From Mobula birostris (lineage: Eukaryota), in contig NC_092374.1 of assembly GCF_030028105.1 (NCBI RefSeq), positions 185,908,638-185,972,637 on the forward strand: 64,000 nt of DNA, written 5' to 3'. Below the pieces are notes generated by a model. It was not told where the DNA came from. It saw only the letters and a program-made list of their open reading frames with translations, and searched no databases. The position numbers and the translations under genes were made by a program. Every line of letters begins with the position of its first letter. Within the stretch, counting starts at the first letter, position 1. Positions 3,681 through 57,894 of this stretch are shown piece by piece.

Positions 3681-3734
3681 CACCACTGTCTTCCCAGATT
3701 TAACAGTTACATTTTCTTTTCTTGCCCTCATCAG

Positions 3735-4043
3735 TCAACAGAGAAGATGCCATTGCAATGCTTGGTTCATCAGTTTTACTGGATTCGGAAGTCGAAGTTA
3801 ACCCGCAGAAGCAAGAGATCGTTTGGACATTCATCAGCAGCCACAACAGCCCTGTCACCATTTTACATCACATCCCGAATTACAAGAAGTGGGTAGAGCC
3901 CAGTGAACAGTTCAAGTTGCGCCTGGGTTTTATTCTTTCCAATGGTTCTTTGATGATAAATGGATTAAAAGTCAGGGACGAAGGAGATTACAGTTTGGAT
4001 GTAGATGGCCGTGAACTGAAAATAATACATTTGTCCCTCTTCG
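3735..4043 (+). CDS. Gene A exon: cysteine-less IgV domain (CD2/SLAM/CEACAM N-domain type)
   Basis: Acceptor ttcttttcttgccctcatcAG and donor GTgagt; 309 bp, phase 1-1. Translates VNREDAIAMLGSSVLLD...EIVWTF...RLGFILSNGSLMINGLKVRDEGDYSLDV..., with C-strand W, GSL.I, D.G.Y and no B/F cysteines. Confidence 0.9.
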
Positions 4044-4500
4044 GTGAGTACATGAATAACTGATTCAAGATTCAAGTTTATTTAACACGTGTACAGTACT
4101 GTGCAAAAGTCTTAGGCACATAAATGTATACAGTAGCCAGCGTGCCTAAGACTTTGTACAGTTTGATATATTATGTCTTTCCATTTGCCAAATACTATTA
4201 GCTCAGTAGTATTAATTGTTATTTGGGAACTGGAAAGACATAATATTCAGTACTTGAGCACCCTAGCTATGTATGTGTACTTCAGACTTTGGCACAATAT
4301 TGTACATGTGGGTTTATCAACATTGGGACTGGCTCTTTCAGTCAGAGTCCTGGAGAAAGATGACAACTGAAACAGGCCTTTCAGCCCACGAACATTTTTG
4401 TTAGCCCTGACATAGCCCTTGTTATTGCTGTTCCTCACTTTGCCCTGACACCTCATTAAATGGTCATCCGTCCCATTCCCGGTACGGCTGAGGGCATATC

Positions 4501-5098
4501 CAGACATCCCACCCTGGAAAAACTCATTTCAGGGCGGTAGCACCATCAATTTGCGGGAGAATCCCTGAACTTCCGGGAGAGGTGGGATGTCTGCAATAGG
4601 GTAGCTCCTGAGCAGCTAGCCAGCTAGTTTAAATAACGTTAGCTATGCTAATGAACGAATGACACCTGCTAAACTCACCTCAACAGGTCTTTTACAGTCT
4701 CAACCCACAATGGGCAATAGAAAAGTCACTGTTGCAAACAGTGCAGCGAGCAACATTGTCATTATTTTGACCCCTATTAGGCAGGGGTACACTTTAGTGT
4801 TGTCTGGGGTGACGTACGTTTTATATTTTCTTTTTTTGGAACACTCTACCATGGTGCGCTCTCGCGCTCTCGGTTGCTCTAGCGGTCTCTCTTGCTCTCT
4901 CTCGTGGTCGCGCGCTCTCACTTGCTTTCTCACTTTCTCTCGTGCTCTCTCTCTCTCTCGTGGTCGCTCTCTCTTGCTTTCTCTCGCTCGCTCTCAAAAA
5001 ATTGATTTCCGTGTTATTGTACATAATTTGCGGGCATCAGGCAGCCACTAGTAATATGCAGGAGACTCCTCGAACTTCCGGGAGAGGTGGGATTTCTG
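4501..5098. mobile_element. Non-autonomous TIR DNA transposon (MITE-like)
   Basis: TIRs cagacatcccacc / ggtgggatttctg flanked by duplicated (g)gcatatc(c); internal (CT)-rich tract; no ORF. Confidence 0.6.
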
Positions 5099-5191
5099 GC
5101 ATATCCCAGCTTGGAACGTGAGCTGCACAGATACGTGGCTGAAAGGCAAGTCCTCCCTTCCCCCCGCACTTGATGAAAGGTGGGAGCCGCA

Positions 5192-5455
5192 GCAGCCGTA
5201 GTAGTTTGACACTATGCCATCAGAGTTCAGAGTTCAATTCCGGCACTGTCTGTGAATGTTTGTACGTCCTTCCCATGAGCACGTGGGTTTCTTCACAGTG
5301 CTCTGGTTTCCTCCCACAGTCCAAAGGCGTACTGGTTAGTGGGTTAACTGGTGATTGTAAATTGTCCCACCGTTAGGCTTGGGTTAAACAGGTGGGTTGC
5401 TGGGCAGTGTGGCTCGTTGGGCTGGGAGGGTCGGTTCTGCACCGTATCCCGAAAT
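5192..5455 (+). mobile_element. V-SINE/HE1-like SINE (related copies at about 12690-12935, 19480-19680 and 37345-37550, all minus strand)
   Basis: Conserved core gtgggtttc...gctctggtttcctcccacagtccaaag repeated in several copies. Confidence 0.7.
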
Positions 5456-6108
5456 AAATGTCACGCAATGAGGTTTCATTGCAAGTCATCAGTTCATAAT
5501 ATGTGGCATTGATTAACTGGACTCTGGAAACTCACCCTCGTTCCTCAAAAACACTTTATTTACTTGTGCACAAGGAGAACTGCATGACCCCTGTCACCGC
5601 ACTGTTCTGAAGTCTGAACAGAGAAAATGCCACTGTCAGAACAAATTGAATTGCTTTACAGATATTGACCAGCTGGGACATGTTCAAGTTCCTGACTTGC
5701 AAAATTAATTGTCATTCAGGATAGTTGCTGCCTGATCCTGGAATCCTTATCTGATCTCCCTGTGCCAAATAGCTCCAGTCCCCTGCTGTGCTATGTTCTC
5801 CAAAGGCCTTCCCTAGTGACCTATCTTGGCTGCACTGACTGCACACTATCTGCATTCTGTGCTTGCCAGGACATTATCGTGACCTTTGCCTTGCTGCCCC
5901 TTCCAGAGTAGCACAGTGCTTATTACATTCGCCTTACAGCGCCAGTGGTCACTGACTGCAGCTCAATTCCCGTCACCGTCCGTAGGCATTTTGTATGTTC
6001 TCCCTGTGACCGTGCGTGTTTCCTCACACATTCCGAACTGTACGGATGGTGAAAAAGGATCTAGTGCTTTCCTGGCGTATGTGACGAATAAACTGTTCTC
6101 AGACTCCC

Positions 6109-6670
6109 AGCCGGCTGTAGGTATCGATTTTAACCAATGTTTCAATGACAAGGTCTGCCATCTTCATCGGGGATGATGTCTGGGCATGTCTAGTCCAGTG
6201 GTATTTATACCCCTGTTGTCCCTCTCTCCTGAATGGTTAGTCCTCATCCAGTCAGGTTTCCACTGAAACCCATATCAAGGAGCACAGGCAATGTATCCGT
6301 TTGGGTTACCTGGAGAAATTGGCAGTGGCAGAACATTGTGTTCACAATGGCCATAGGATTGAATTCGACGGCACAAAACTGTGCCACGCCAATGGCTTTT
6401 GGGACCACCTGGTGAAGGAAGCATTTGAAATAAAACTAGAGGAATAGAATTTTATTCAGGGCAAACGTCTTCCTTTAGGTAAGAACTGGAATTTGGTTGT
6501 AAGCAAGGTGGGACGGCAGAAACCTGATTGGATGAGGACTAACCATTCAGGAGAGGTGGAATACAGGGGTGTAAATACCACCGGACTAGACATGCCCAGG
6601 CATCGTTCCTGATGAAGATGACAGAGTTTGTCACCGAAACGTCAGTTAAAATCGATACCTACACCTGGCT
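6109..6670 (+). mobile_element. Penelope-like element remnant: GIY-YIG 3' fragment between inverted pseudo-LTR arms
   Basis: Arms about 6109-6260 and 6519-6670 are reverse complements; the spacer translates HIKEHRQCIRLGYLEKLAVAEHCVHNGHRIEFD; CTGATGA...GAAACGTC motif at 6609-6643. Confidence 0.75.
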
Positions 6671-6827
6671 TGAAGCCCAAGAGAGCTTATTCATGTACGG
6701 TTAGGGTTAGTGAGTTGTGTTCATGCTATGTTAGCGTGTCAGCACGTCTGGACTGCACAGTCACAAAACAACATATTTAACTACACGTTATTGAAGTACA
6801 AATAAAGCTAGTCTTTCTGCCCTTTAG

Positions 6828-7088
6828 ATAACCTGTTGGAAGCTACGATATTGACCAGCTCCTCCTTCCCTGCTTCTGCTATCTGGCTCATCTGCAACGT
6901 CAGTGGAGATCCTCAAAAGTATCAATGGTGGAAAAATGGAGCGGAAATCCCCCGACTTCACCAACTTATCGATGGCAATCGGACTCTAATGATCATGGAT
7001 GCCTCAAGACATGACTGTGGAATTTATACCTGCGCGGCAACCAATCCAGTCAGCTTCATCCAGGCTAACCACACCCTATTCATTTCTG
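6828..7088 (+). CDS. Gene A exon: IgC2 domain
   Basis: Acceptor gtctttctgccctttAG and donor GTgagt; 261 bp, phase 1-1. DNLLEATI...WLICNVSGDPQKYQWWKNG...NRTLMI...DCGIYTCAATNPVS has canonical C-W-C plus one extra Cys. Confidence 0.92.
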
Positions 7089-7659
7089 GTGAGTTTCGTT
7101 TGTAAATCTTATTCTGAGAGTAAATTTGACATCCTCGTTTAGTGGCCTGCTTTGGAAATGAATCTGTCAGCACTGGGAGTGTTAAAGTTCCTAGAAATTT
7201 TGCAATAGGCAAAGAGGCCATTGGGTCCATCTTGTCTGTACTAGCTCTGAGTACTCCACCTACTCCCTTTTCCTGCTCCACAATTAAATCTGTCTCGATT
7301 ACAACTATTCTTGAGGCAAGATTCGACAACATACCCTGACAACATACCAGCTTGGATTCTTTTGCTAATCATCGTCCTTCTACTTCCTCCAGTTCTCAAC
7401 CTCTCTGGTTTCAAATAACTCTATCAGATCTTCTCACGTCCTCCCCTATTCCACAGAGAATGGCTTCAGTCTCTTCAGTCCGCCCACACGGCTCTCAATC
7501 GAGGAACCTTGAATTGAGGCTGAGGAGGGGTATTGTCTCTATCTCTGTAACTCTGAGCCACCCTTCCTGCTTTCTAATTTTTTATTATTTGTCATCTATT
7601 CAGCCTCATCTGCAAATAATACTTCTTCCTGAACAGACAAACACTTAACCTAAACATTT

Positions 7660-8733
7660 AAGGAAAGAGTGGGAATAAACGGGACCTTTTCAGAATGGCA
7701 GGCAGTGACTAGTGGGGTACCGCAAGGCTCAGTGCTGGGACCCCAGTTGTTTACAATATATATTAATGACTTGGATGAGGGAATTAAATGCAGCATCTCC
7801 AAGTTTGCGGATGACACGAAGCTGGGCGGCAGTGTTAGCTGTGAGGAGGATGCTAAGAGAATGCAGGGTGACTTGGATAGGTTGGGTGAGTGGGCAAATT
7901 CATGGCAGATGCAATTTAATGTGGATAAAGTGAGGTTATCCACTTTGGTGGCAAAAATAGGAAAACAGATTATTATCTGAATGGTGGCCAATTAGGAAAA
8001 GGGGAGGTGCAATGAGACCTGGGTGTCATTATACACCAGTCATTGAAAGTGGGCATGCAGGTACAGCAGGTGGTGAAAAAGGCAAATGGTTTGCTGGCAT
8101 TCATAGCAAGAGGATTCGATTACAGGAGCAGGGAGGTACTACTGCAGTTGTACAAGGCCTTAGTGAGACCACACCTGGAGTATTGTGTGCAGTTTTGGTC
8201 CCCTAATCTGAGGAAAGACATCCTTGCCATAGAGGGAGTACAAAGAAGGTTCACCAGATTGATTCCTGGAATGGCAGGACTTTCATATGATGAAAGGCTG
8301 GATCGACTAGGCTTATACTCATTGGAATTTAGAAGATTGAGGGGGGATCTTATTGAAACATATAAAATCCTAAAGGGATTGGACAGGCTAGATGCAGGAA
8401 GATTGTTCCCAATGTTGGGGAAGTCCAGAACGAGGGGTCACAGTTTGAGGATAAAGGGGAAGCCTTTTAGGACCGAGATTAGGAAAAACTTGTTCACACA
8501 GAGAGTGGTGAATCTGTGGAATTCTCTGCCACAGGAAACAGTTGAGGCCAGTTCATTGGCTATATATAAGAGGAGTTCGATATGGCCCTTGTGGTTAAAG
8601 GGATCAGGGGGTATGGGGGGAAAATTGGTACAGGGTTCTGAGTTGGATGATCAGCCATGATCATACTGAATGGCGGTGCAGGCTCAAAGGGACGAATGGC
8701 CTACTCCTGCACCTATTTTCTATGTTTCTATGT
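7660..8733 (+). mobile_element. CR1 LINE, 5'-truncated RT
   Basis: GVPQGSVLGP, FADDTK, RPHLEYCVQFW; (tttctatg)n tail. Confidence 0.95.
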
Positions 8734-8757
8734 AACCTGTCATCAAATGGGGGGTGT

Positions 8758-11700
8758 AATAGAAACATAGAAAACCTACAGCACAATACAGGCCCTTCGG
8801 CCCACAAATCTGTGCCAAACATGTCCTTACCTTAGAACTACCTAGGCTTACCCATAGCCCTCTATTTTTCTAGGCTCCATGTACCTATCCAGGAGTCTCT
8901 TAAAAGACCCTATCGTTTCCGCCTCCACCACCGCTGCCGGCAGCCCATTCCACACACTCACCACTCTCTGCCGAAAAACCTTACCCCTGACATCTCCTCT
9001 GTACCTACTTCCAAGCACCTTAAAAACTCTGTCCTCTCATGATATCCATTTCAGTCCTGGGGAAAAAGCCTCTGACTATCCACACAATCAATGCCTCTCA
9101 TTATCTTGCACACCTCTATCAGGTCACCTCTCATCCTCCGTCACTCCAAGTAGAAAAGGCCGAGTTCACTCAACCTATTCTCAAAAGACATGCTCCCCAA
9201 TCCAGGCAACATCCTTGTAAATCTCCTCTGCACCCTTTCTATGGTTTCCACGTCCGTCCTGTAGTGAGGCGACCAGAACTGAGCGCAGTACTCCAAGTGG
9301 GGTCTGACCAGGGTCCTATATAGCTGTAACATTACCTCTCGGCTCCTAAACTCAATGCCATGATTGATGAAGGCCAATGCAGCGTATGCCTTCTTAACCG
9401 CAGAGTCAACCTGCTTAGCAGGTTTGAATGTCCTGTGGACTCGGACCCCAAGATCTCTCTGATCCTCCACACTGCCAAGAGCCTTACCATTAATGCTATA
9501 TTCTGCCATCATATTTGACCTACCAAGATGTACCACCTCACACTTATCTGGGTTGGACTCCATCTGCCACTTCTCAGCCCAGTTTTGCATCCTATCAATG
9601 TCCCATTGTAACCTCTGACAGCCCTCCACACTATCCACAACACCCCCAACCTTTGCGTCATCAGCAAATTTACTAACCCATCCCTCCACTTCCTCATCTA
9701 GGTCATTTATAAAAATCACAGTGAGTAGGGGTCCCAGAACAGATCCCTGAGGCACACCACTGGTCACCGACCTCCATGCAGAATATGACCCATCTACAGC
9801 CACTCTTTGCCTTCTGTGGGCAGGCCAGTTCTGGATCCACAAAGCAATGTCCCCTTGGATCCCATGCCTCTTTACTTTCTCAATAAGCCTCGCATGGGGT
9901 ACCTTATCAAATGCCTTGCTGAAATTCACATACACTTCATCTACCACTCTACCATCATCAATATGTTTAGTCACATCCTCAAAAAATTCAGTCAGGCTTG
10001 TAAGGCATGACCTGCCTTTGACAAAGTCATGCTGACTATTCCTAATCATATTATGCCTCTCCAAATGTTCATAAATCCTGCCTCTCAGGATTTTGTCCAT
10101 CAACTTACCAACCACTGAAGTAAGATTCACTGGTCTATAATTTCCTGGATATCTCTACTCCCTTTCTTGAATAAGGGAACAACATCCGCAACCCTCCAAT
10201 CCTCCGGAACCTCTCCTGTCCTCATTGATGATGCAAAGATCATCGCCAGAGGCTCAGCGATCTCCTCCCTCGCTTCACACAGTAGCCTAGGGTACATCCC
10301 ATCTGATCCCGGTGATTTATCCAACCGGTTGCTTTCCAAAGGCTCCAGCACATCCTCTTCCTTAATATCTACATTTTTAGTCCACTGCAAGTCAACCCTA
10401 CAATGGCCAAGCTCCTTTTCAGTAGTGAATGCTGAAGCAAAGTATTCATTAAGTACTTCTGCTTTCTCCTCCGGTTCCATACACACTTTTCCACTGTCAC
10501 ACTTGATTGGTCCTATTCTCTCACGTCTTATCCTCTTGCTCATCACATACTTGTAGAATGCGTTGGGGTTTTCCTTAATCCTGTCTGCCAAGGCCTTCTC
10601 ATGGACCCTTCTGGCTCTCCTAATTTCATTCTTAAGCTCCTTCCTGCTAGCCTTATAATTTTCAAGATCTCTATCATTACCTTGTTTTTTGAATATTTCG
10701 TAAGCTCTTCTTTTCTCCTTGACTAGATTTATTACAGCCTTTGTACACCACGGTTCCTGTACCTTGCCATCCTTTCCCTGTCTCATTGGAACATACCTAT
10801 GCAGAACCCCATGCAAATATCCCCTGAACATTTGCCACATTTCTTCCGTACGTTTCCCTGAGAACATCTGTTGCCAATTTATGCTTCCAAGTTCCTGCCT
10901 GATAGCCTCATTTTTCCCCTTACTCTAATTAAACGTTTCCCTGACTTGTCTGTTCCCGTCCCTCTCCAATGCTATGGTAAAGGAGATAGAATTGTGATCA
11001 CTATCTCCAAAATGCTCTCCCACTGAGAGACCCAACACCTGACCAGGTTCATTTCCCAATACCAGATCTAGTACAGCCTCTCCTCTTGTAGGCTTATCTA
11101 CGTATTGTGTCAAGAAACCTTCCTGAGCACACCTAATAAACTCCACCCCATCTAAACCCCTCACTCTTGGAAGATGCCATTCAATATTTGGGAAATTAAA
11201 ACCTCCCACCACAACAACCCTGTTATTATTACACCTTTGCAGAATCTGTCTCCATATCTGCTCCTCACAAACTCTCCCCAGTAGGCTTAGCAAACCTCCC
11301 TGCCAGGATATTGGTCCCCCTGGGATTCACGTGCAACCTGTCCTTTTTGTACAGGTCACACCTGCTCAAAAAGAGGTCCCAATGATCCAGAAATTTGAAT
11401 CCCTGTCCCCTGCTCCAATCCCTCAGCCACGCATTTATCCTCCACCTGATTCTATTCCTGTACTCACTGTCACATGGCACAGGCAGTAATCCCGAGATTA
11501 CTACCTTTGATGTCCTGCTTCTCAACTTCCTTCCTAACTCCCTATAGTCTGTTTTCAGAACCTCCTTCCTTTTCCTGCCTATTTCGTTGGTACTGATATG
11601 TACCACGACCTCTGGCTCTTCTCTTACCCACTTCAGGATATTGTGGATGCGATCAGGAACATCCTAGACCCTGGCACCTGTTAGGCAAACTACCATCCGC

Positions 11701-12392
11701 GTTTCTTTCCTGCATCCACAGAATCGCCTGTCTGACCCCCTAAGTATGGAGTTCCCTATCAATACTGCCAGCCTCTTCCTTTCCCTACCCTTCTGAGCCA
11801 CAGGGCAGACTCTGTGCCAGAGGCATGACCACTGTTGCTTCCCGCAGGTAGGCCATCTCCCCCAACAGTACTCAAACAGGAGTACTTATTGTTAAAGGAG
11901 ACAGCCACTGGGGTACTCTCTAGCATCCGCCTCTTGCCCTTCCCTCTCCTGACTGTTATCCACTTGTCTGTCTCCCGTGGCCCCGGTGTGACCACCTGCT
12001 TATATCTCCTCTCTGTCACATCCTCACTCTCCCTGACCAGATGAAGGTCATTGAGCTGCACGTCTAGTTCCCTAATGCAGTCCCAAAGGAGCTGTCGCTC
12101 GATGCACTTGCGCAGGTATGGCTGTCCGGGAGGCTGGGAGTCTCCAGGACCTCCCACATCTGACACCGAGCACAGAAAACCAGCCTCACACACATACTTT
12201 CTGTCTGTATTCTACGCAGATAACCTACATCACCTTGACCCATTATCGCCGAAGCCCTGTTGAGCCAAAGCCTTCCTACTCTGTCGCCCGCTTCTCCGGC
12301 GCCCGCTGTATAAATCTATCTTCTTTTTAAACTCATCTCGCTGTTCTCACTGACGTCCACGCGCTTGCGCAGTCGTGCCCCGTTCAAAAGGC
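8758..12392 (-). mobile_element. CR1 LINE, near full length and degraded (ORF1 esterase, APE, RT)
   Basis: Minus-strand ORFs 9141-10130 (RT), 10127-10867, 10925-11293 (APE), 11265-12193 (ORF1: HISTNEIG, GLHxNPRG). Confidence 0.95.
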
Positions 12393-13312
12393 TGAAGACA
12401 TTTTTTTTCTCCTGATTCAGTGGACAATGAGCTAAGAGTAGTGGTTAGAAATTGAAATAATGTATTGTCATCTACCATAATCCTTGTACCGTTCTATTTT
12501 GCTGATGAGTAACCACTTTCTGTGGATAGTCATAGTCATACTTTATTGATCCCAGGGGAAATTGGTTTTCATTACGGTTGCACCATGGTAGCCATGGTAA
12601 CAGTTGGTAACGTTTTTTTTCCCTAAAAATAACCACACTAACCCATGATATGTGTTCCTTTTAATTTGTTATTTATTTATGAGATACAGTGCGGAATATG
12701 CCCTTCGAGCCGTGCCACCCAGCAATCCCTCGATTTAGTTCTCGCCTCATCATGGGACAATTTGCAACGATCAATTGACCTCCCAGCCAGTATGCCTTTG
12801 GACTGTGGGAGGAAACCCTTGCAGTCAAGGGGAGAATGTACAAACTCCTTACTGGCTGCAGTGGGAATTGAACCTGGGACGCTGGTACTGTAAAGCGTTG
12901 TGCTAACCACTACACTACGTGTGGTCCCATGGTAACGTAGCTCTTCTACGACTTGCATCTTAATCCCTGGTCAGGTGACCTGCTGAGGAGCCGGGGTTAG
13001 CAACGTGTCTTCTGGGCCTGGGGAAAGAATATCCGTCACGCCCCAAGTTTTGCATCTTCTGTCAGTTTGGAATGTTGCTCGGAGTTGTTCATTCTTGGCT
13101 GGAACAGCAAGTTGCTGTCTAGTAAGTGCTCCTGAGAGGGCATGTAGAGCATGTTGGTACAGGCGTGAAGTCACAGGCTGGTGAAATGGGTCAGGGGCTG
13201 GCGCTTTCCCATCCCTGCAGGAGATGAAGGGAACCGTAGGCTTGTTGCAATTCATAGCAAATCCCTTTGTTGTCTCTGTGTAACATTGTTCAAAGTTATT
13301 TTTTAATTGCAG

Positions 13313-13414
13313 GTTTTCATCAAGAGGACGTAGCAATAATTGTTCTGTCGGTGATCTCTTCGGTGCTTTCTATTTTGCAGTGCTCGCAGTGCTTGCTGCT
13401 GAAGACAGACAGAG
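13313..13414 (+). CDS. Gene A exon: TM helix 1
   Basis: ttattttttaattgcAG ... GTattt; 102 bp, phase 1-1; GFHQEDVAIIVLSVISSVLSILQCSQCLLLKTDR. Not in the ORF track. Confidence 0.8.
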
Positions 13415-14129
13415 GTATTTATCACTGTGTCCCAAATGAATGAAAGGAATCCTGGTTATTTTCTTGACTTAATTTTTGTTCTTTAAGAATTGTCTCAAAT
13501 ATGTGGCTGCCCTGATTAACCGATGGCCCAGTTAACTGGAATCCACTGCACGTACTGTAGAGCTCACCATATACTAAGTGGAGTTTCATTTTCTTGCAGG
13601 CTTTTACAGGAATGTAAAGAAATACATTTGAATTTATGAAAACCTTTACATAAAGACTGACGAACAGCCAATGTGCAAAAGAAAACAAATTGTGCAAATA
13701 ATTTAAATAAATAATATTGAGAACATGAGTGGTAGAGTCCTTAAAAGTGAGTCTGTAGGTTGTGGGATCAGTTTAGAGTTGAGATGAGTGAGTGAGGGGG
13801 CTAAGCACACAAACTGTGCTGATGGTAATTGTGGAGGAGATGTCTTTGCCAATCTGAACTGACTGGGATCTGCAAGTGAGGAAATCAAGGAGGGATTGAT
13901 TACAATTGTTGACTTACACAGGGAGGTATTGGGGCATTCAAATTTCAGGGCTGGAATTTGAAGGGTCACACACAGCCCTCTCTCTCTCCTCCTCTCCCCC
14001 TCCCTAGTGCACAGCCCTCGCACACTCAGCTCCCTCCCTCCCTCTCTGATACACATAAGCTCTTCAAATCCCAGTTGAGCACCACTTCCTGGAGAGTAAC
14101 GGAGGGTCCCGATAGATGCTGGACCAACC

Positions 14130-14790
14130 AGCAAAACCCCAATGAATTAAAAGCACCAGGGGAAGGAGAGGTGTCCCTCGGACCACATGCTGGAAGATCC
14201 CTCAAAACTGGTTCATCAGTTGCCAGTGGGCTCCCTGGACAAACACCACTTGTTCACTGCTTAGTGTCTCTGCATTCAGGCATTTTGGCCTGCAGCCCCA
14301 TTTGGGGTACAGATTCCACCCTGGACTAGAACACTGTCTAGTGCCCGAGAGCATCCAGGTACAGTGATGACCCAGTCCTTGGCCTCGCAGCAGAGTTCAG
14401 GGTGAAACTGCAACTTCTGGGCTGCTGTAGGTTAATGCTACCCCAGCTCCCATAATCATTGGGATGATGCACACATGATTCACATTGTATTCTTTCCTCC
14501 TCCACTGGGCTCACACACAGGGAGACTGCATTCTATCTGTCTTTTCCGTATTCAGCCCATGGATAGTCAGATGGCATAGTAGGAGATGAGCTGTTTTCTG
14601 GTGCTTTTTGCTCCTCTCTGCTGTCTCCTCTTTGCTGCTAGTGTCCGTCAGCTCTGAGACTCCTCCAGTGCTCTGGTGGCTACTCCACCCCCGGGCTGGT
14701 ATTTGAGTTGAGTGCCACCAGCAGCCTGACTGGTCCCAAGTCCCAGCTCCGTTACCGCGAGCTCGCTCTCTGATTCCTGTGTCCAACCAT
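14130..14790 (-). mobile_element. Degraded Tx1/L1-like LINE fragment (ORF1 end to APE start)
   Basis: Antisense, frameshifted resemblance to the Tx1-type ORF1/ORF2 junction. Confidence 0.4.
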
Positions 14791-14838
14791 TTATGTAGGT
14801 CTCACATTTGGACTGTTCTGGATTTTTCTTGATTGCAG

Positions 14839-14952
14839 CTGTGAGGCGGGTCAAATGCTTGAGGCAGTTCCTGGGTATCTGTACCTTCATGACCTACGTC
14901 ACGACCGTCATGACCTGTGTCGCGACCCTCATCAAACTTATCCCCACGAAAG
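14839..14952 (+). CDS. Gene A exon: basic loop plus TM helix 2
   Basis: gatttttcttgattgcAG ... GTacgt; 114 bp, phase 1-1; AVRRVKCLRQFLGICTFMTYVTTVMTCVATLIKLIPTK. Confidence 0.78.
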
Positions 14953-16168
14953 GTACGTGTGTGATGTTCTGCATGTGCATTGTTCTGATCAGTGTGGGAT
15001 TCAGCACACCCTCCACCTTCACATCCAGCACTCAAGGACAGGCAGGGTGGGTATCTGGACTCCAGAAGGCATGTGAAGGAACTGGTAAATTAAAGGCATA
15101 ATTATAAAGCTGGGAAAACAGTTGTTGGTTCAGTGTGTAGAGGTAACCTGCAGGGGCTGAAGTTGGCAGGATTTGGGTCATGGTGCTGTACAGGAATGTG
15201 TGGTGGGCCTTTTGGAGGAAGGAGGTGGAATCTTTCACGAGGTGATTTCCCAGGATGCTGCCTGGACTAGAGCTTGTCTCCTAGGACAGGTTGAGCGAGC
15301 TAGGACTTTCTCATCAGTGGAAAGGGGGATGAGAGGTGACTTGAGAGAATTATACAAGGTAAGAAGCGTAGATCGAGTAAATAGCCAGAGACTTCTTCCC
15401 CAGAGCTGAAACAAGGAGGCACAATTTTAAGATAGGTATAGAAGAGATGTTAGAGGCAGTTTTTGTTTTAATACACAGAGATTGGTGGGTGTGTGGAATA
15501 CCCTGCCAGGGGTGGTGAAAGAGGTAGATACATTAGGGGCATATGATAACTCTTGGGCACTTGGAGGAGAGAGAAAATGCAAAGCTATGTAGGATGAGAG
15601 GAAAATGGAAAGTGACGAAGGAGGGATGGGTTCGATTGATCTTAGACTAGGTTAAGAGGTCGACACAACACCATGTGACAAGGGCTCTACTGTTCTGTAG
15701 AGTGCTATGCAACTGGTCCTTGGATTGACTGGGCTGATGATGTGAAATGCGACTTTACCAAGTTGGTCAAGTTTGATCGGAGAGGTGACATTGTGAACTA
15801 ACTGGCAGAATGAATCACCAGAGATGAATAGATTATGCAAACAGGCAGAACTTCAACAAATGGATTTCATTGTAGTTACCGGTCAGTAAATATGTGTCAT
15901 GTGCCCCAGATTTTGAAAAAGGACAGGACAAGAGTGGATACTAAAGAAGAAACTGTGGAGACTTGAGCTGCAGATACTGGAATCTGGAACCGCAAATAAT
16001 CTGCTGCAGGACCTCAGTGCATCAGTCAGCATCTGTGGGAGGCGGAAGGACTCTGGACATTTCCTGGGTGAAACCCTACATCAGTAACTTGCACTCCAAA
16101 AACAGATAGAAATGGGCTCTTTGAACTGAATCCTTACCATTTATCGAGCATCCGCTTGCCTTCTATAT

Positions 16169-16810
16169 ATGGGCAAGACCCAACGCAGACTGGGAGACCG
16201 CTTTGCTGAACACTTACGCTCTGTCCGCCAGAGAAAGCAGGATCTCCCAGTGGCCACACATTTTAATTCCACATCCCATTCCCATTCTGACATGTCTATC
16301 CACGGCCTCCTCTACTGTAAAGATAAAGCCACACTCAGGTTGGAGGAACAACACCTTATATTCTGTCTGGGTAGCCTCCAACCCGATGGCATGAACATTG
16401 ACTTCTCTAACTTCCGCTAATGCCCCACCTCCACCTCGTACCCCATCCGTTATTTATTTTTATACACACATTTTTTCTCTCACTCTCCTTTTTCTCCCTC
16501 TGTCCCTCTGACCATACCCCTTGCCCATCCTCTGGGTTCCCCCCCGCCTTGTCTTTCTCCCCGGGCCTCCTGTCCCATGATCCTCTCATATCCCCTTTGC
16601 CAATCACCTGTCCAGCTCTTGGCTCCATCCCTCCCCCTCCTGTCTTCTCCTATCATTTCGGATCTCCCCCTCCCCCTCCCACTTTCAAATCTCTTACTAA
16701 CTCTACCTTCAGTTAGTCCTGACCAAGGGACTGGGCCTGAAACGTCGACTGTACCTCTTCCTAGAGATGCTGCCTGGCCTGCTGCATTACCAGCAACTTT
16801 GATGTGTGTT
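16169..16810 (+). mobile_element. Penelope-like element 3' end (GIY-YIG C-terminus and pseudo-LTR)
   Basis: GKTQRRLGDRFAEHLRS...RLEEQHLIFCLGSLQPDGMNIDFSNF; degenerate hammerhead motif (CTGACCA). Confidence 0.9.
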
Positions 16811-17962
16811 GGTTGGGGCATCTGGGACCAGGAGACCTGGGGCTAGGGTCAATTGCATAGTACTGTTCTGTTTGTTTTAATATTAGGAATCGCTTCTCCC
16901 CAGAGTGAAAAGAAGTAATATTCTGTCTGGAAATTCAATGGGGCACGAGGGGCATCAGTCACTTTTGCTTGGCCGGTGATGTCATTCCCTGTATGACAAT
17001 TTCCGGTTGGGGAACTGCAAGTTAATTGGACCATGCTGTCCTGGGAGTTCCCGCACTGGGCGGTCCCAGGGCCATTCTCTTTCATCACTGCAGCTCCAAA
17101 CTCTAGGATGCCTTCCAGATGTTAGTCACTGAACTTCATCCACCAGGTCTTCAGAGTGTCCTGACTTTTCTTCACCCACACCTCTGCACACCTGCTTGAA
17201 TTGTTCACGTAAACATGTTTGCAACATTCAAGGTCAGGCGGCGTCTCTGTAGTGAGAGGTGGACAGTGAAATGCTGTCTACCCCCCCCCCACACTGTTTG
17301 CAACGACATACCTCTTTGCACCAGTGGTGAACCCAGTGATGATTCTCCCATCATCTGAGTCGGTCTGGAGAGCCGGTGGTTCAGGTCTGTCACCGTCAGA
17401 TGGAGTGAGGTTAGAAATCTGTGTTTCCTTTTGCAGAGATGGGTGAAGGGCTGAGCTGAAGAAAGTGAACTGTGTGGAGGGGCGGAGACCAGGAGAGCCT
17501 TTCGAGTGTCTCACCCTGGTCTGGTCTACCCACAGCTGGTGAGAGGGCAGTTCAGGGGAACAAATGCTAAGGGGTGTAACGAAAAGGAATAGAGAGAAAT
17601 AAAAGAAAGAATGGCACTTCTGAACAATCTATCACTTCTATAGATAAGATGAAGAAAATTCCTTAGTGATAATTTAGTCAATAGGCTACGCAATTAAAAC
17701 AATTACATCACATGGGCAATACTTTTAAAAAGAACAAATCTTATAAAAAGTATTATTTTTAAAAAAGTGGTTTCCAACAAGAGGTTTCACCCTCAGGTGA
17801 AGCAGGTGAAAAGCAGATCCAGCATTGCCCCCTCTACAGAAACAGTATATAAAGCACAGTTCTGGGGAAGTTACAGAATGGAAATCCTGCGTCTCGTTGT
17901 TTAATTTCCCGTTTATTACTGAGTGAACCGCTGACCATTGCTGTGGGGTCTTTGCTCCCCAG

Positions 17963-18070
17963 GTTCGGACCCTGTCGTAGCAGCGGTTTATTGCACGGTG
18001 TCCCTTCAGCTTCTGACTTTGGGTCTGCTGCTCGTTGTCCACTGGCGAGACAGTCTCAAAAAGAGGGCAG
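17963..18070 (+). CDS. Gene A exon: TM helix 3
   Basis: tctttgctccccAG ... GTaaga; 108 bp, phase 1-1; GSDPVVAAVYCTVSLQLLTLGLLLVVHWRDSLKKRA. Confidence 0.82.
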
Positions 18071-18273
18071 GTAAGAGACTGGATCATTCAATGTACAACC
18101 TCTCAGTGAAGGAAAGGAATGGAGGGTTATGGGCTGAGTGCAGGTCGGTGGGACTAAGTGAGAGTAAGAGTTCGGCACGGACTAGAAGGGCCGAGGTGGC
18201 CTGTTTCCATGCTGTAATTGTTATATGGTTATATGGTTAATGCACTCTAATCGTCACACTTTGTGCTTGACAG

Positions 18274-18372
18274 CTACAAGCGTTTGTATTTTGGAAAGGA
18301 CCGTAGCTGGACTTCATGTCATCGTGATCATCACTTCAGTCGTTTTTTTAGCATTATTAAGTCATCCAGACT
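18274..18372 (+). CDS. Gene A exon: TM helix 4
   Basis: cactttgtgcttgacAG ... GTgagt; 99 bp, phase 1-1; ATSVCILERTVAGLHVIVIITSVVFLALLSHPD. Not in the ORF track. Confidence 0.8.
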
Positions 18373-19111
18373 GTGAGTTTGCCTAGAGCTCTTCATCATT
18401 GTTTATGGCAATGCATGGTTTTGATCATTTTCTTTGTTATATACACACACACACACAGTTGGTTTATTGATCACTGCAGAGTGGTTCTCTGCTGCTTCCT
18501 GCTTCCTCCTCTCTCCTTTCCCCAACCACGATGCCCCTCTCCCTGACCCCTTCCCACTCTCAGTCCACAGTAGAGACCCATTTCAGATTCAGGTTTATCA
18601 TCATTCACAAATGGCATGAAATCTGTTTAACTTTGTTTCCAGCAGCAATACATAAACTTACTACTGTACTGTCTCAAAGTGTTAGGCACCCAAGCAAGAC
18701 TGTACTTAGGAGACAGAAGGGATGAACTTGGAAAAGTTAATAATTATGAAAGGCAGAGATGAGCTGGACAGTCTTTTCCCCAGGGTCGGGAAGTTGAAAA
18801 CACGAGGGCATAGATTTAGGTTGAGAGGGGAAAGATCTGAAACAGACCTGAAGGACAGTTTCTTTTAAAACAGAGTGTGATCAGGGTATGGAACAATTTA
18901 ACAGAGGAACAGGTTGAGACAGGTACAATACCAGAAGCTCTGGGAAGTGTTTAACACCTGGACAGGTACATGGAGGGACGGGCCATGCACCATCCTCTCT
19001 TTGCCATTGCTCTGTGAATTTGCTGTGGAAGGTGCATTGGATGTTTACTGTACTGTGGATGTGGGCACTTGGTGTCAGTTTACTCAGTTTCATCATGTTG
19101 CACATTTTCAG

Positions 19112-19210
19112 ATCAAGGCTGTGAAAGCAGCTTTATTGTCTGGATGGTATTCTTTGGAGCAGTGATCGTGGGTGCTGTGGTCTTTCTCTTCAACTTCGTG
19201 GTCCAACGCC
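19112..19210 (+). CDS. Gene A exon: extracellular loop plus TM helix 5
   Basis: tgttgcacattttcAG ... GTaagt; 99 bp, phase 1-1; YQGCESSFIVWMVFFGAVIVGAVVFLFNFVVQR. Confidence 0.85.
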
Positions 19211-20598
19211 GTAAGTAAATACCAAACCATTCAGCAGCTGCTGTATCGCTTCCCAGAGTAAAGACCTTCCCCCGATCTCACAGCCGCTTCAGCTCCTACG
19301 AGGGTTTCCCGGGCTCTGCTTGAGTTCCCTCACGGAGCTGCTGGCCGTGCAGGTGGGGTTTTGGACTCCTGCTGGGACGTAGAAGTGAACAACCTCCCAG
19401 CTGAACTCCAGTGATACCCCACTGGGCTCCTTGGAGACTGATGGAGAGGTCTGACAGAGCGCAGAATAGGCCCCTCGAGCCGTGCTGTCCAGCAAACCTC
19501 AATTTAATCCGAACTTAATCACAGGACAGTTTGCAGTGGTACGTCTCTGGACTGTGGGAGGAAACCCACACGGCCATGGCGAGAGCGTACAAACTCCTTA
19601 CAGGCAGTGGCGGGAATTGGACCCAGGTTGCTGGTACAGTAAAGCATTGTACTGACCTCTACATTACTGCGAAATCTGTAAAGGATCGATTTCTTAGATG
19701 GAATCAAAGATGCAAATGAAGGCATCAACACTGAAGAAACAGCACCAGATATTTTGTTAAAATAGATTCCTACTGTTTGTCAAAATTTCATTTTATGTGT
19801 TTAGAAATTGACTATTTTACACCTAAAAATTAATTCATTGTGTGTTCATAATGCTGCTCTCTCTTGGACACTGATTCACCCAGCCCAGAGGATCTGGGTA
19901 CATACTGTGACCTTACTGTAGCACTGGGGGCTCACCAGGTTCCAGAACCCATGTCTTACAGAAATTGCCCCATAACTTAAAGAATTTTTTTCAGGTTTGC
20001 AATAATGAAATGTTTACAATACTACAAGATACAGTGTGTGTTCTGAGTTAATTATGGTTGTCTTAGAATAAATGTTGGAAATTATCGTTAAAATGAAAGG
20101 ACAAGTTATTAAGGTTTCTGTTGAGAATTCAGGAGAATGGTTTTGAGAGGGAAAATAAATCAGCCATGATGGAATAGTGGAGCAGACTCGATGGGCCAAA
20201 TGATCTAGTTCTGCCCCTATGTCTTATTGTTTTAGAGGAAGTGTAGGCAGGGCGATGTGATGTGGGTAGCTACAGGAAACAGATGTTCCTGCTTTACATA
20301 AAGATTAGTTTACAAACAGCTCTTGGGAACTGAGGTCTTGTGTAACACCGCGTCTATCTGTATACAGTTTCTCTTGAAGTTATAGAACTACTTTGTCTAT
20401 TCACATTCCCCAGTTAACTTGTAGAGATTGCCTGTTATTGAAATATTCTCTGTGAGTTGGTACCTGGATTCCTCAGTCTGCCGCAGTCTCTGTAGGCATG
20501 TCCTTCTCCACGTGTCACCCTTCCCCTTGGCGTGATGCTTCTGTTGATTGACTGGGATTCACCTACTTCCTGTAACAAATGCACTTTTGTCATTTTAG

Positions 20599-20867
20599 TA
20601 TCCTGCAGAAAGGAAAATTCTGAAATGGACCCACCAGATCCCACAGCTTCTGATGAACTTCTGATGTCTGATTTAAAAAGCGTACATCAGTCTTCATTTT
20701 CAGACAACATTCCCAGTTCGAAGCCTTAACAGTCTGAACTCAGTCTTGATGACACCTTGGTTTCCCAGCCAAATGCTGAGTCACAGGAATGTTGCGTACT
20801 GGAGAATGAAGAGAAGAGCTGTACAGATGAAAACGAAAGCCTGGATAGGAACAACATGGAGTCATAG
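20599..20867 (+). CDS. Gene A probable terminal exon: acidic cytoplasmic tail with an in-frame TAA at 20727-20729
   Basis: Acceptor gcacttttgtcattttAG, phase 1. LSCRKENSEMDPPDPTASDELLMSDLKSVHQSSFSDNIPSSKP* is followed by 45 more open codons, QSELSLDD...NNMES, ending at TAG 20865-20867. Confidence 0.6.
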
Positions 20868-57384: not shown

Positions 57385-57690
57385 CTGAAAGGGAAGAAGT
57401 GGTTGGTGTCCTTGGTTTATCAGTTTCACTGGACCCTAATACCACCGTTGATTCCAGCAAGAATGAAATCCGTTGGACTTTCAAAGCCAGCAACAAAAGC
57501 GAATATGACATTTTGGATCACATCCCAAGTCACGCCGCATCAGAACCAAACGAACAGTTCAAGGACCGTTTACAATTCAACACTTTGAGTGGTGCACTGA
57601 CGATAAGCAGATTAAATGCCAGTGACCAAGGAGATTACACCTTCACTGTTGATGGGAAAGAGTTGAAAATAATGGAGTTGCTTGTCATTG
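57385..57690 (+). CDS. Gene B exon 2: cysteine-less IgV domain, paralog of the gene A IgV
   Basis: ttttctttttattcaaatcAG ... GTaaga; 306 bp, phase 1-1; AEREEVVGVLGLSVSLD...EIRWTF...ILDHIP...EPNEQFKDRLQF...DQGDYTFTVDGKELKIMELLVI. About 45% identical to the gene A IgV by hand alignment. Confidence 0.9.
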
Positions 57691-57894
57691 GTAAGAAGTT
57701 TCAGATATTTGTAATGTAATGTGTGATTTATTAATGGTGGAATCTGTCATAGAAACTATGATCTGTTATTTTTATTTACATCAAAGTCTAAGTAGGATAA
57801 CCTCTGCTGTGAATAAACAATTGAGTCCTTGGAGGACTTTGAAGCTGGTGATACAAGAACAGCAGAATTTCTGCTGAGAACCTGATTCTCCTCG

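What the first reader, a model, noticed from the sequence alone, without database searches (positions are those of the whole stretch)
3735..20867. Hidden gene: CD2/SLAM-type IgV+IgC2 ectodomain on a five-pass (CD47-like) membrane bundle
Seen in sequence: eight short exons among the transposons, all with AG/GT boundaries and phase-1 junctions, splice into one open frame of IgV, IgC2, TM1-5 and an acidic tail. Loop charges fit N-out/C-in: KTDRAVRRVKCLR (in), KLIPTKGSDP (out), HWRDSLKKRA (in), SHPDYQGCESS (out), QRLSCRK (in). Known: CD2/SLAM/CEACAM receptors have Cys-less N-terminal V domains plus C2 domains but are single-pass or GPI-anchored, whereas Ig plus 5TM is the hallmark of CD47, which has a single disulfide-bonded IgV. 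Inference: this is a chimeric V-C2-5TM receptor class that I do not recognise as characterised, and it is either a divergent CD47 relative or an independent 5TM acquisition. Automated annotations of such proteins as uncharacterised may already exist.
Basis: partly seen in the sequence, partly recalled or inferred. Interest (0 to 1): 0.88.

Follow-up and report, generated by a model that had tools for sequence, protein, structure and literature searches.

The report
Ray surface protein on five-helix anchor
This is a real manta-ray gene for a cell-surface protein with two antibody-like domains on a membrane anchor that crosses five times, a build otherwise known only from the 'don't-eat-me' marker CD47; it belongs to a large, unstudied family found in sharks, rays and chimaeras.

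Summary
Eight + strand exons (3735-20729), all AG/GT and all phase 1, give a 406-aa frame: Cys-less IgV, IgC2, five hydrophobic helices, acidic tail. RNA contigs from four runs join the five helix exons in the predicted order. GenBank's Mobula birostris 'uncharacterized protein' (P0180) is 98.3% identical.

Three corrections:
- The TM4 exon starts at 18274.
- The frame stops at TAA 20727, not 20867.
- The signal-peptide exon lies upstream of the window.

The gene belongs to a multigene family. I collected 133 proteins and isoforms, every named one from Chondrichthyes, Callorhinchus included. All are labelled 'uncharacterized' or given borrowed names such as HEPACAM-like. I found no paper describing the family.

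An extra IgC2 cysteine and a TM4-TM5 loop cysteine are kept or lost together (44 both, 5 neither, 3 loop only, 0 Ig only). This points to an interdomain disulfide like CD47's.

Kinship with CD47 is not shown. Pfam, profile and fold searches are negative or inconclusive. Only a weak protein-language-model lead points to CD47, though it did so in all three queries. Whole-length structural matches suggest the same build in some bony vertebrates, unverified.

The scan had already noted paralogues of this family elsewhere in this genome, with the same conclusion. Function is inferred, not shown.

The parts
3735..4043 (+). Exon for the N-terminal IgV domain, which has no cysteines (CD2/SLAM/CEACAM-N type). 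Phase 1 at both ends.
   Evidence: AG/GT boundaries. Pfam V-set 3e-6, Receptor_2B4 0.009. 100% identical to the M. birostris GenBank locus. 93% identical to M. hypostoma P0003.
6828..7088 (+). Exon for the IgC2 domain. It has the canonical Cys pair plus an extra Cys five residues before the F-strand Cys (motif D-C-G-I-Y-T-C).
   Evidence: Pfam Ig_3 5e-11, I-set 4e-10. Best PDB sequence matches are CEA (1e-31) and CEACAM1 (7e-19). The extra Cys covaries with the TM4-TM5 loop Cys.
13313..13414 (+). Exon for the linker (S-G-F) and TM1, ending in the first cytoplasmic loop.
   Evidence: Hydropathy peak 2.26. RNA joint to the next exon in all four runs. Contig pieces begin at 13312, the exon border.
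14839..14952 (+). Exon for the rest of the basic cytoplasmic loop 1, TM2 and the start of extracellular loop 1.
   Evidence: Hydropathy peak 1.75. RNA joints on both sides. 100% identical to L001.
17963..18070 (+). Exon for the conserved Gly of extracellular loop 1, TM3 and the start of cytoplasmic loop 2.
   Evidence: Hydropathy peak 2.12. RNA joints 14952|17963 and 18070|exon 6. The Gly is nearly invariant in the family.
18274..18372 (+). Exon for cytoplasmic loop 2 and TM4. It carries a 12-nt in-frame insertion (18277-18288, four residues T-S-V-C) that is absent from the RNA contigs and from GenBank M. birostris.
   Evidence: The acceptor AG at 18272-73 keeps phase 1. The RNA reads G+CTA+TTTTGG. 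The L001 alignment shows the 12-nt gap. Hydropathy peak 2.68.
19112..19210 (+). Exon for extracellular loop 2, with the conserved G-C-E cysteine, and TM5.
   Evidence: RNA joint 18372|19112 with GT..AG in all four runs. Hydropathy peak 2.79. The loop Cys is present in at least 90% of family members.
20599..20729 (+). Last coding exon: basic membrane-proximal stretch, then an acidic, serine-rich tail with no tyrosine. Stop TAA at 20727-29.
   Evidence: Frame and acceptor. P0180 ends at the same residue. This junction was not covered by the RNA lay.
20730..20867 (+). Former coding tail, now behind the stop: 45 further in-frame codons without another stop. M. hypostoma still translates them.
   Evidence: Translation. 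P0003 and P0143 read on through this stretch.
57372..57695 (+). IgV exon of the next family member downstream. The rest of that gene is off the window.
   Evidence: tblastn 48% identity. Family HMM 1.6e-41. Best matches are the multi-IgV members P0192 and P0002 of M. birostris.

Best explanation
This is a real protein-coding gene of a manta or devil ray (Mobula). It belongs to an unnamed multigene family of immunoglobulin-superfamily surface proteins found across cartilaginous fishes.

Shown:
- The mature protein has a Cys-less IgV domain and an IgC2 domain outside the cell, of the CD2/SLAM/CEACAM kind.
- These sit on a bundle of five membrane helices, each encoded by its own phase-1 exon.
- The short acidic tail has no tyrosine.

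Inferred from sequence:
- Topology is N-terminus out, C-terminus in. This rests on the upstream signal peptide, the Ig domains and basic residues on the predicted inner loops.
- The IgC2 domain is pinned to the TM4-TM5 loop by a disulfide between its extra cysteine and the loop cysteine, as the IgV domain of CD47 is. This rests on covariation.

Most likely mode of action, inferred and untested:
- A cell-cell recognition or adhesion molecule whose Ig face binds a conserved partner, or binds itself.
- Because it lacks ITIM, ITSM or ITAM motifs, it would act as a displayed ligand or marker, or signal sideways through partners of the helix bundle, as CD47 does, rather than through its own tail.
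For: Gene model and splice sites. Five hydropathy peaks. Five helices in AlphaFold2 models (pLDDT 70.8 for the TM part alone; 80.6 for the whole, with Ig domains above 90).

RNA contigs join exons 3-4-5-6-7 in four runs.

Independent annotation: P0180 (M. birostris, 422 aa) is 98.3% identical. Its locus is colinear with window 1-21811 at 98.5-99%. M. hypostoma P0003 and P0143 are about 90% identical.

Family size and range: 142 IgV hits, of which about 60 carry the 5-TM module. 76 profile hits are all chondrichthyan, including Callorhinchus P0242, which carries the module (E 1e-9), the D-C-G-I-Y-T-C motif and the K-G-C loop. Consecutive LOC numbers on single chromosomes indicate tandem clusters. 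Rays form one clade at 100/100, and several paralogue lineages are shared between orders.

Ectodomain class: Foldseek matches to CAR, CD2, NTB-A, CEACAM1 (26% identity), CD58 and CD48, with TM-scores by target of 0.7-0.8. CEA and CEACAM1 match by sequence.

Disulfide: 44 members have both cysteines, 5 have neither, 3 have the loop Cys only, and none has the Ig Cys only. The CD47 C15-C245 precedent is in PMC8410850.

Conservation: extracellular loops (30-38% mean pairwise identity) are better kept than cytoplasmic loops (17%), and Ig domains (45-49%) better than the helix module (26%). This fits a conserved binding face resting on the loops.
Against: - No function, ligand, tissue or cell type is known. 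The runs are coded and nothing links the gene to immunity beyond the type of its domains.
- The Ig-to-TM1 junction was not seen directly in reads.
- The RNA contigs are not letter-for-letter this copy (14907 G>C and the missing 12 nt), so expression of this exact allele is not proven.
- This copy carries a 12-nt insertion in cytoplasmic loop 2 and a stop that removes 45 tail residues kept in M. hypostoma. The stop is shared with GenBank M. birostris.
- The helix packing in the models has only moderate confidence (pLDDT 65-77).
- The disulfide rests on covariation among related sequences. The 5 'neither' cases come from about 3-4 independent genes, so it is not a structure or an experiment.
Confidence: 0.8

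Rival explanations
1. The five-helix module shares ancestry with the CD47 membrane domain. On this reading the family is a divergent sister of CD47, or the older two-Ig form from which CD47 derived.
For: - Same overall plan: an Ig domain directly on five helices, N-out and C-in, with a short tail.
- Five helix exons here. In human CD47, exon 2 encodes the IgV domain and exons 8-13 the tails, which leaves exons 3-7 for the membrane domain (PMC10902115). One helix per CD47 exon is my recollection, not something I tested.
- A conserved Cys in the TM4-TM5 loop covaries with an Ig Cys, like CD47 C15-C245. A nearly invariant Gly sits at the top of TM3, like CD47 G191.
- The protein-language-model search using only the helix part of three members, 11-16% identical to each other, gave the CD47/OPG166 cluster (PF04549) as first hit each time, with scores 0.64-0.69.
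- Mouse and rat CD47 align over the whole module in Foldseek, but only at E 0.41 and TM-score 0.27.
Against: - Pfam PF04549 does not match any of 31 members scanned, even at E up to 10.
- A profile of 21 modules finds no CD47 chain in the PDB at E up to 10.
- Foldseek against PDB, Swiss-Prot models and viral models, and VIA-align, place CD47 nowhere near the top.
- Language-model scores below 0.9 are leads only by the tool's own calibration, and they may reflect the Ig-plus-multipass context rather than homology.
- The partner cysteine sits in a C2 domain here, not in a V domain.
Confidence: 0.35
2. The five-helix module was acquired independently of CD47. A CD2/CEACAM-type gene gained extra helix exons, or fused with an unrelated small multipass gene, and the likeness to CD47 is convergent.
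For: - No sequence or fold test detects CD47.
- The best, still weak, fold matches of the module are four-helix MS4A/FcεRIβ-type proteins (E 0.15-0.25, TM-score about 0.4).
- The ectodomain is clearly CD2/SLAM/CEACAM-like and not CD47-like.
- All junctions are phase 1, so exons of this kind can be added or dropped without breaking the frame. Predicted isoforms lacking the TM4 exon or an Ig exon exist.
Against: - It does not explain why the CD47 cluster is the first language-model hit for three very different members.
- It does not explain the parallel Ig-to-loop cysteine pair.
- No donor family for the module was found either. It matches nothing in Pfam, the PDB, the AFDB Swiss-Prot set, BFVD or the Atlas shape search.
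Confidence: 0.35
3. The family is real, but this particular copy is decaying or is a non-functional allele.
For: - Compared with M. hypostoma, a CAA-to-TAA change at 20727 cuts off 45 residues whose frame is still open.
- The window has a 12-nt insertion in exon 6 that is absent from all RNA contigs and from GenBank M. birostris.
- The 11 nucleotide differences from the GenBank locus in exons 5, 6 and 8 cause 7 amino-acid changes.
- No RNA contig matches this copy exactly.
Against: - The 406-codon frame is intact across eight exons with good splice sites.
- Exons 1, 2, 4 and 7 are 100% identical to the GenBank locus, while the surrounding DNA differs by about 1.5%. This indicates purifying selection.
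- The insertion is in frame and lies in a variable cytoplasmic loop.
- The stop is shared with the annotated M. birostris protein, and family tails vary widely in length.
Confidence: 0.1
4. The exons belong to different genes or to transposon debris, and the joined frame is an artefact.
For: The introns are full of LINE and other repeats.
Against: - Single RNA contigs carry exons 3, 4 and 5, with joints onward to exons 6 and 7 and 196-289 nt upstream.
- Dozens of independent gene models in 20 species have the same order of domains.
- The family HMM hits exactly these exons and nothing else in 64 kb apart from the neighbour's IgV exon.
Confidence: 0.02

Closest known systems
CD47 (integrin-associated protein; Pfam PF08204 V-set_CD47 + PF04549 CD47 membrane region), including the poxvirus CD47-like proteins (OPG166)
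   Same: - An Ig domain sits directly on five membrane helices, N-terminus out and C-terminus in, with a short cytoplasmic tail lacking tyrosine signalling motifs.
- The membrane domain is spread over five small exons.
- A conserved cysteine in the TM4-TM5 loop appears to be paired with a cysteine of the adjoining Ig domain.
- A conserved glycine sits at the outer end of helix 3.
- It is the first language-model hit for the helix part.
   Different: - There are two Ig domains, not one.
- The outer domain is a Cys-less V domain of the CD2/CEACAM kind. The membrane-proximal domain is a C2 domain, not CD47's V-set domain.
- No detectable sequence similarity to PF04549, and no significant fold match with the present models.
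- It is a multigene family in tandem clusters, whereas CD47 is (from memory) a single gene.
- A SIRP-like partner is unknown.
CD2/SLAM family (CD2, CD58, CD48, 2B4, NTB-A)
   Same: - Two-domain V-C2 ectodomain with a Cys-less N-terminal V domain.
- Best structural matches, with TM-scores by target of 0.7-0.8.
- Weak Pfam hits to Receptor_2B4 and SLAM.
- Clustered multigene organisation.
   Different: Those proteins are single-pass or GPI-anchored, and SLAM receptors signal through tyrosine switch motifs. This protein has five helices and no tyrosine in its tail.
CEACAM family (CEACAM1, CEA)
   Same: - Cys-less N domain followed by IgC2 domains.
- The IgC2 exon's best PDB sequence matches are CEA and CEACAM1.
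- CEACAM1 has the highest identity among structural matches, at 26%.
- Phase-1 exon-per-domain gene structure (phase 1 for CEACAM is from memory), and a rapidly duplicating cluster.
   Different: CEACAMs are single-pass with ITIM or ITAM tails, or are GPI-anchored. None is known with a multipass anchor.
MS4A / FcεRIβ / CD20 four-helix proteins
   Same: They are small multipass immune-cell membrane proteins and give the best fold scores for the helix module, although these are still insignificant.
   Different: They have four helices with both ends inside the cell and no Ig domain. TM-scores are about 0.4 and E-values 0.15-0.25.

Membership tests
Unnamed chondrichthyan IgV-IgC2-5TM family (for example M. 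birostris P0180, Pristis LOC127585772/3, Callorhinchus P0242) | Full-length similarity, including the five-helix module | tested here: met
   98.3% identity to P0180. The family HMM hits all seven domain exons. The locally iterated HMM finds the module in 133 of 242 collected proteins.
Unnamed chondrichthyan IgV-IgC2-5TM family | Extra IgC2 cysteine plus TM4-TM5 loop cysteine | tested here: met
   Both are present in the window protein (D-C-G-I-Y-T-C and Q-G-C-E). The family pattern is 44 both, 5 neither, 3 loop only, 0 Ig only.
CD47 | Five membrane helices after an Ig domain, N-out and C-in | tested here: met
   Five hydropathy peaks. Five helices in both AlphaFold2 models. Basic residues cluster in loops 1 and 3 and after TM5. 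Topology itself is inferred.
CD47 | Sequence match to the CD47 membrane-region model PF04549 | tested here: not met
   No hit for the single exons, for 10 full-length members at E up to 1, or for 21 modules at E up to 10. The module profile finds no CD47 chain in the PDB at E up to 10.
CD47 | A single V-set ectodomain of the CD47 type (PF08204) with an internal disulfide | tested here: not met
   There are two Ig domains and the N-terminal V domain has no cysteine. PF08204 touches only the C2 domain, at E 0.02-0.1, below its cut-off.
CD47 | Disulfide between the Ig domain and the TM4-TM5 loop | tested here: inconclusive
   Cysteine covariation supports a pair, but the Ig partner is in a C2 domain and no structure or chemistry was available. 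The model coordinates could not be measured with these tools.
CD47 | Fold of the helix bundle as in the full-length CD47 crystal structure described in PMC8410850 (PDB 7MYZ from memory) | tested here: inconclusive
   Mouse and rat CD47 models rank 17 and 19, at E 0.41-0.45 and TM-score 0.27. CD47 is absent from the top of the PDB, VIA-align and viral searches. The model's helix region has pLDDT of only 65-77.
CD47 | Membrane domain encoded by five consecutive small exons | tested here: met
   Met on this side: exons 3-7 carry one helix each, all phase 1. On the CD47 side, five exons (3-7) follow from PMC10902115. Intron positions and phases of CD47 were not compared.
CD2/SLAM family | V-C2 ectodomain with a Cys-less N-terminal V domain | tested here: met
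   CD2, CD58, CD48 and NTB-A are among the best structural matches.
CD2/SLAM family | Single membrane span or GPI anchor; tyrosine switch motifs in SLAM receptors | tested here: not met
   Five helices. There is no tyrosine in the 42-residue tail, or in the 45 codons behind the stop.
CEACAM family | N domain plus IgC2 domains similar to CEACAM1 and CEA | tested here: met
   The IgC2 exon matches CEA at 1e-31 and CEACAM1 at 7e-19. CEACAM1 shows 26% identity and TM-score by target 0.73.
CEACAM family | Single-pass anchor with an ITIM or ITAM tail, or a GPI anchor | tested here: not met
   Five helices and no tyrosine motif.

The most novel reading that the evidence does not exclude
The five-helix module is the long-missing relative of the CD47 membrane domain. 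On this reading, cartilaginous fishes, and probably some teleosts, amphibians and reptiles, keep a whole family of V-C2-5TM proteins. CD47, said to be 'the only 5-TM receptor of the immune system', would be the single survivor in mammals, having lost one Ig domain. The family would then give the first outgroup for working out what the CD47 helix bundle does.
Probability: 0.3. Interest if true: 0.8.

Novelty: new variant of a known kind. Interest (0 to 1): 0.62.

Why it matters
CD47 is described as the only five-span receptor of the immune system, with a membrane fold that has no known relatives (PMC8410850). What that bundle contributes is still unclear.

This finding shows a large, old family that puts a different, CD2/CEACAM-type ectodomain on a five-helix anchor. 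It is shared by chimaeras, sharks and rays, so it goes back to their common ancestor. The anchor apparently has the same Ig-to-loop disulfide as CD47.

If the two are related, CD47 gains an evolutionary context and natural variants for structure-function work. If they are convergent, the same solution arose twice, which argues that a multipass anchor does something a single helix cannot, such as fixing the orientation of the Ig domain or recruiting partners sideways in the membrane.

The practical consequence is that dozens of database entries named HEPACAM-like, CD48-like, contactin-like or VEGFR2-like are misnamed.

Tried and rejected
1. Signal-peptide exon in window 1-3734: a scan for ATG, a hydrophobic stretch and a phase-1 donor, and tblastn with the N-termini of P0180, P0183 and P0143, found nothing credible. 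The exon is upstream of the window.

3. Pfam on each helix exon and on whole modules: only noise.

4. Module profile against PDB sequences: one chance hit, the zinc transporter SLC30A4 at E 4.

5. Fold searches with the helix-only model against PDB, Swiss-Prot models, VIA-align wide, BFVD and the Atlas shape library: no significant or specific match, only generic helical bundles.

6. Reaching bony-vertebrate members or CD47 with profile searches of the 5.8-billion-protein set (A2 full-length; A4 with a full-length first row and module-only rows): only chondrichthyan proteins came back. The 8000-candidate word filter was hit both times, so absence elsewhere is not shown.

7. A direct profile-profile comparison with CD47 could not be run. 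No tool returned a CD47 sequence by reference, and I did not type one from memory.

9. Papers on CEACAM evolution mention a little-skate CEACAM homologue known from ESTs but say nothing about multipass anchors.

Full report
**What is in the sequence.** Between 3735 and 20729 on the + strand there are eight short exons among LINE-type repeats. Each has an AG acceptor behind a pyrimidine tract and a GT donor. The first seven are multiples of three in length, and all junctions are phase 1. Joined, they give an open frame of 406 residues.

- Exon 1 (3735-4043) is an IgV domain without cysteines (Pfam V-set 3e-6, Receptor_2B4 0.009).
- Exon 2 (6828-7088) is an IgC2 domain (Ig_3 5e-11, I-set 4e-10).
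- Exons 3-7 each hold one hydrophobic stretch. A 19-residue Kyte-Doolittle scan gives exactly five peaks between 1.75 and 2.79.
- Exon 8 encodes a basic then acidic, serine-rich tail with no tyrosine.

- The TM4 exon must start at 18274, using the AG at 18272-73. The nearer AG at 18297-98 breaks the frame.
- The frame stops at TAA 20727-29.
- There is no signal-peptide exon in the window.

**Transcripts.** Two searches of public runs found RNA-type runs from several coded organisms that hold the IgV exon and the helix region.

- Contigs of four runs show joints at 13414|14839, 14952|17963, 18070|exon 6 and 18372|19112. The ends are GT..AG, once the tool's stated 2-letter shift is applied.
- One 1101-nt contig and one 1008-nt contig carry exons 3, 4 and 5 in series. 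They have 196 and 289 nt in front of exon 3, which is room for the 261-nt IgC2 exon. Their aligned piece begins exactly at the exon border.
- The exon 5 to exon 6 joint was reported as '18070 to 18287 with one letter C between'. This is how a 12-nt difference shows up in the alignment. The RNA reads G, then CTA, then TTTTGG, which is the acceptor at 18273/18274 followed by sequence lacking 18277-18288.

Caveats:

- The contigs differ from the window by one to several letters per exon. For example, 14907 G>C (Val to Leu) appears in all four runs. They may therefore come from an allele, a sister species or a near-identical paralogue.

**Independent annotation and identity of the locus.** A search of 1.84 billion representative proteins with the IgV exon gave 142 hits. 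The best full-length ones are about 400-470 residues and have four to six hydrophobic peaks after two Ig domains.

- M. hypostoma LOC134346683 and LOC134346685 are about 90% identical to the model.
- M. birostris 'uncharacterized protein' P0180 (422 aa) is 98.3% identical. It supplies the signal peptide, and it ends at the same residue as the window's frame.
- Its GenBank locus (GCA_030028105.1, CM057560.1) is colinear with window 1-21811 at 98.5-99%. The first exon lies about 13.7 kb upstream of the window start.
- Exons 1, 2, 4 and 7 are letter-identical between the two assemblies. Exons 5, 6 and 8 carry 11 nucleotide changes, giving 7 amino-acid changes, plus the 12-nt insertion that only the window has.

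The window is therefore the same locus from another individual or from a very close Mobula species.

**The family.** A locally iterated HMM of the helix module found it in about 60 of the first 142 proteins, and finally in 133 of 242 collected proteins and isoforms.

- Taxa: every named member is chondrichthyan.
  - Rays and skates: Mobula, Pristis, Hemitrygon, Hypanus, Amblyraja.
  - Sharks: Rhincodon, Cetorhinus, Carcharodon, Scyliorhinus (two species), Mustelus, Hemiscyllium, Chiloscyllium, Stegostoma, Heterodontus, Heptranchias, Pristiophorus.
  - Chimaera: Callorhinchus milii.
- Names: 'uncharacterized protein', or borrowed labels such as HEPACAM-like, CD48-like, CXADR-like, contactin-6-like, VEGFR2-like and 2B4-like.
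- Clusters: runs of neighbouring LOC numbers on one chromosome indicate tandem clusters. The window itself holds the IgV exon of the next member at 57372-57695.
- Phylogeny: a maximum-likelihood tree of 38 members puts all ray sequences in one clade (100/100) and the shark sequences with the chimaera on the other side. Several paralogue lineages in each are shared between orders. The window's gene falls with Mobula, Hemitrygon and Hypanus orthologues.
- Earlier notes: this scan had already noted paralogues 82 kb, 87 kb, 135 kb and 2.4 Mb beyond this window. One follow-up reached the same verdict, an unstudied shark-and-ray family built like CD47 with kinship unproven.

**Features that bear on mechanism.** Two family alignments agree: one of the 21 helix modules and one of 22 full-length members.

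- They show the canonical IgC2 cysteine pair, an extra cysteine five residues before the F-strand cysteine, and a cysteine in the TM4-TM5 loop (G-C-D/E).
- Among 52 members with a complete module, 44 have both extra cysteines, 5 have neither, 3 (isoforms of one gene) have only the loop cysteine, and none has only the Ig cysteine. The Callorhinchus protein has both. I read this as an interdomain disulfide.
- CD47 has exactly such a bond, C15 of the IgV domain to C245 of the TM4-TM5 loop. It is needed for SIRPα binding and signalling (PMC8410850).
- A glycine at the outer end of TM3 is nearly invariant here. CD47 also has a conserved glycine there.
- Mean pairwise identity is 45-49% in the Ig domains and 26% in the module. 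Within the module, the two extracellular loops (38% and 30%) are better kept than the cytoplasmic loops (17%). That fits loops that pack against the Ig domain, and an ectodomain with a conserved partner.
- Family tails vary in length and sequence and show no shared tyrosine motif.

**Comparison with known families.** The full-length AlphaFold2 model has pLDDT 80.6, above 90 in the Ig domains and 65-77 in the helices. It matches two-domain V-C2 adhesion molecules: CAR, CD2, NTB-A, CEACAM1 (26% identity), CD58 and CD48. The IgC2 exon's best PDB sequence matches are CEA and CEACAM1.

The helix module matches nothing.

- No Pfam family matches, and specifically not PF04549, in 31 members.
- There is no PDB chain by profile.
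- There is no significant Foldseek or VIA-align match in the PDB, Swiss-Prot models, viral models or the Atlas.
- Mouse and rat CD47 do align end to end with the module, but at E 0.41 and TM-score 0.27.

One lead points the other way. A protein-language-model search with only the helix part of three members, about 11-16% identical to each other, returned the CD47/OPG166 cluster as first hit each time, with scores of 0.64-0.69. The tool's own calibration treats scores under 0.9 as leads only.

The human CD47 gene has its IgV domain in exon 2 and its tails in exons 8-13. That leaves five exons for the membrane domain (PMC10902115), the same count as here. I could not run a profile-profile comparison because no tool gave me a CD47 sequence by reference.

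**Possible wider distribution.** The full model was searched against AlphaFold DB fold clusters. Six entries align over the whole query, residues 2-5 to 357-372, so over all five helices: A0A3Q0GE46 (E 1e-21), A0A4D9ECI9, A0A1L8HSN6, A0A0G2KFQ0, A0A6P6KYE3 and A0A5A9N8Z6.

The tool hides their organisms. From the accession series I believe they are a crocodilian, a turtle, Xenopus and cyprinid fishes, but that is memory, not a result. I could not fetch the sequences to test them with the family HMM. The two profile searches that might have reached them hit the word-filter cap. 'Restricted to cartilaginous fishes' is therefore not established.

- Shown: the gene, its splicing pattern, the two Ig domains plus five helices, and a large chondrichthyan family that is annotated but uncharacterised.
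- Inferred: N-out/C-in topology, the IgC2-to-loop disulfide, and a role as a displayed recognition or adhesion molecule that acts through its Ig face and through lateral partners of the bundle rather than through its tail.
- Open: whether the bundle is related to CD47's, which I rate about even between descent and convergence, and whether this copy, with its in-frame insertion and shortened tail, is fully functional.

Noticed in passing
window 18277-18288: A 12-nt in-frame insertion (four residues in cytoplasmic loop 2). It is present in the window but absent from GenBank M. birostris and from every RNA contig laid.
   Followed up: yes
window 20727-20867: TAA stands where M. hypostoma has a Gln codon. 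The 45 codons behind it are still open and similar to the M. hypostoma tail, so this is a young truncation of the cytoplasmic tail. It is shared with the GenBank M. birostris protein.
   Followed up: yes
window 17963-18372 and 20599-20729, compared with L001: All 11 exonic differences from the GenBank locus fall in exons 5, 6 and 8, and 7 of them change the protein. Exons 1, 2, 4 and 7 are identical. This may be a gene-conversion tract from a paralogue or a divergent haplotype block.
   Followed up: partly
window 57372-57695 (+): IgV exon of the neighbouring family member, 48% identical to this gene's IgV. It is closest to M. birostris members that carry three or four IgV domains.
   Followed up: partly
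P0182, P0183 (M. birostris paralogue); P0146, P0158, P0169: Some predicted isoforms lack the TM4 exon. That gives four helices, which would put the tail outside the cell. Others lack one Ig exon, which gives a one-Ig, five-helix form of CD47-like size. Because all exons are phase 1, such skipping keeps the frame. Whether these forms are real was not tested.
   Followed up: no
window 16090-16889 and 18090-18289: Intronic repeats with enormous depth in all four RNA runs (summed word depth 1e4 to 3e5). They are probably a very abundant transcribed SINE-like or other short repeat of the Mobula genome.
   Followed up: no
window 7669-8660 (+), 9141-10867 (-), 10925-12193 (-), 58086-61960 (-): Long open frames of LINE-type retrotransposons (reverse transcriptase, endonuclease, ORF1-like) fill the introns and the intergenic space. 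Some copies are 92-96% alike within the window.
   Followed up: no
Read-laying table 3, window 14907: All four RNA runs read C where both assemblies have G (Val to Leu in TM2). Leu is also the residue in the M. birostris paralogue and in M. hypostoma, so the expressed copies sampled are not this exact allele.
   Followed up: partly
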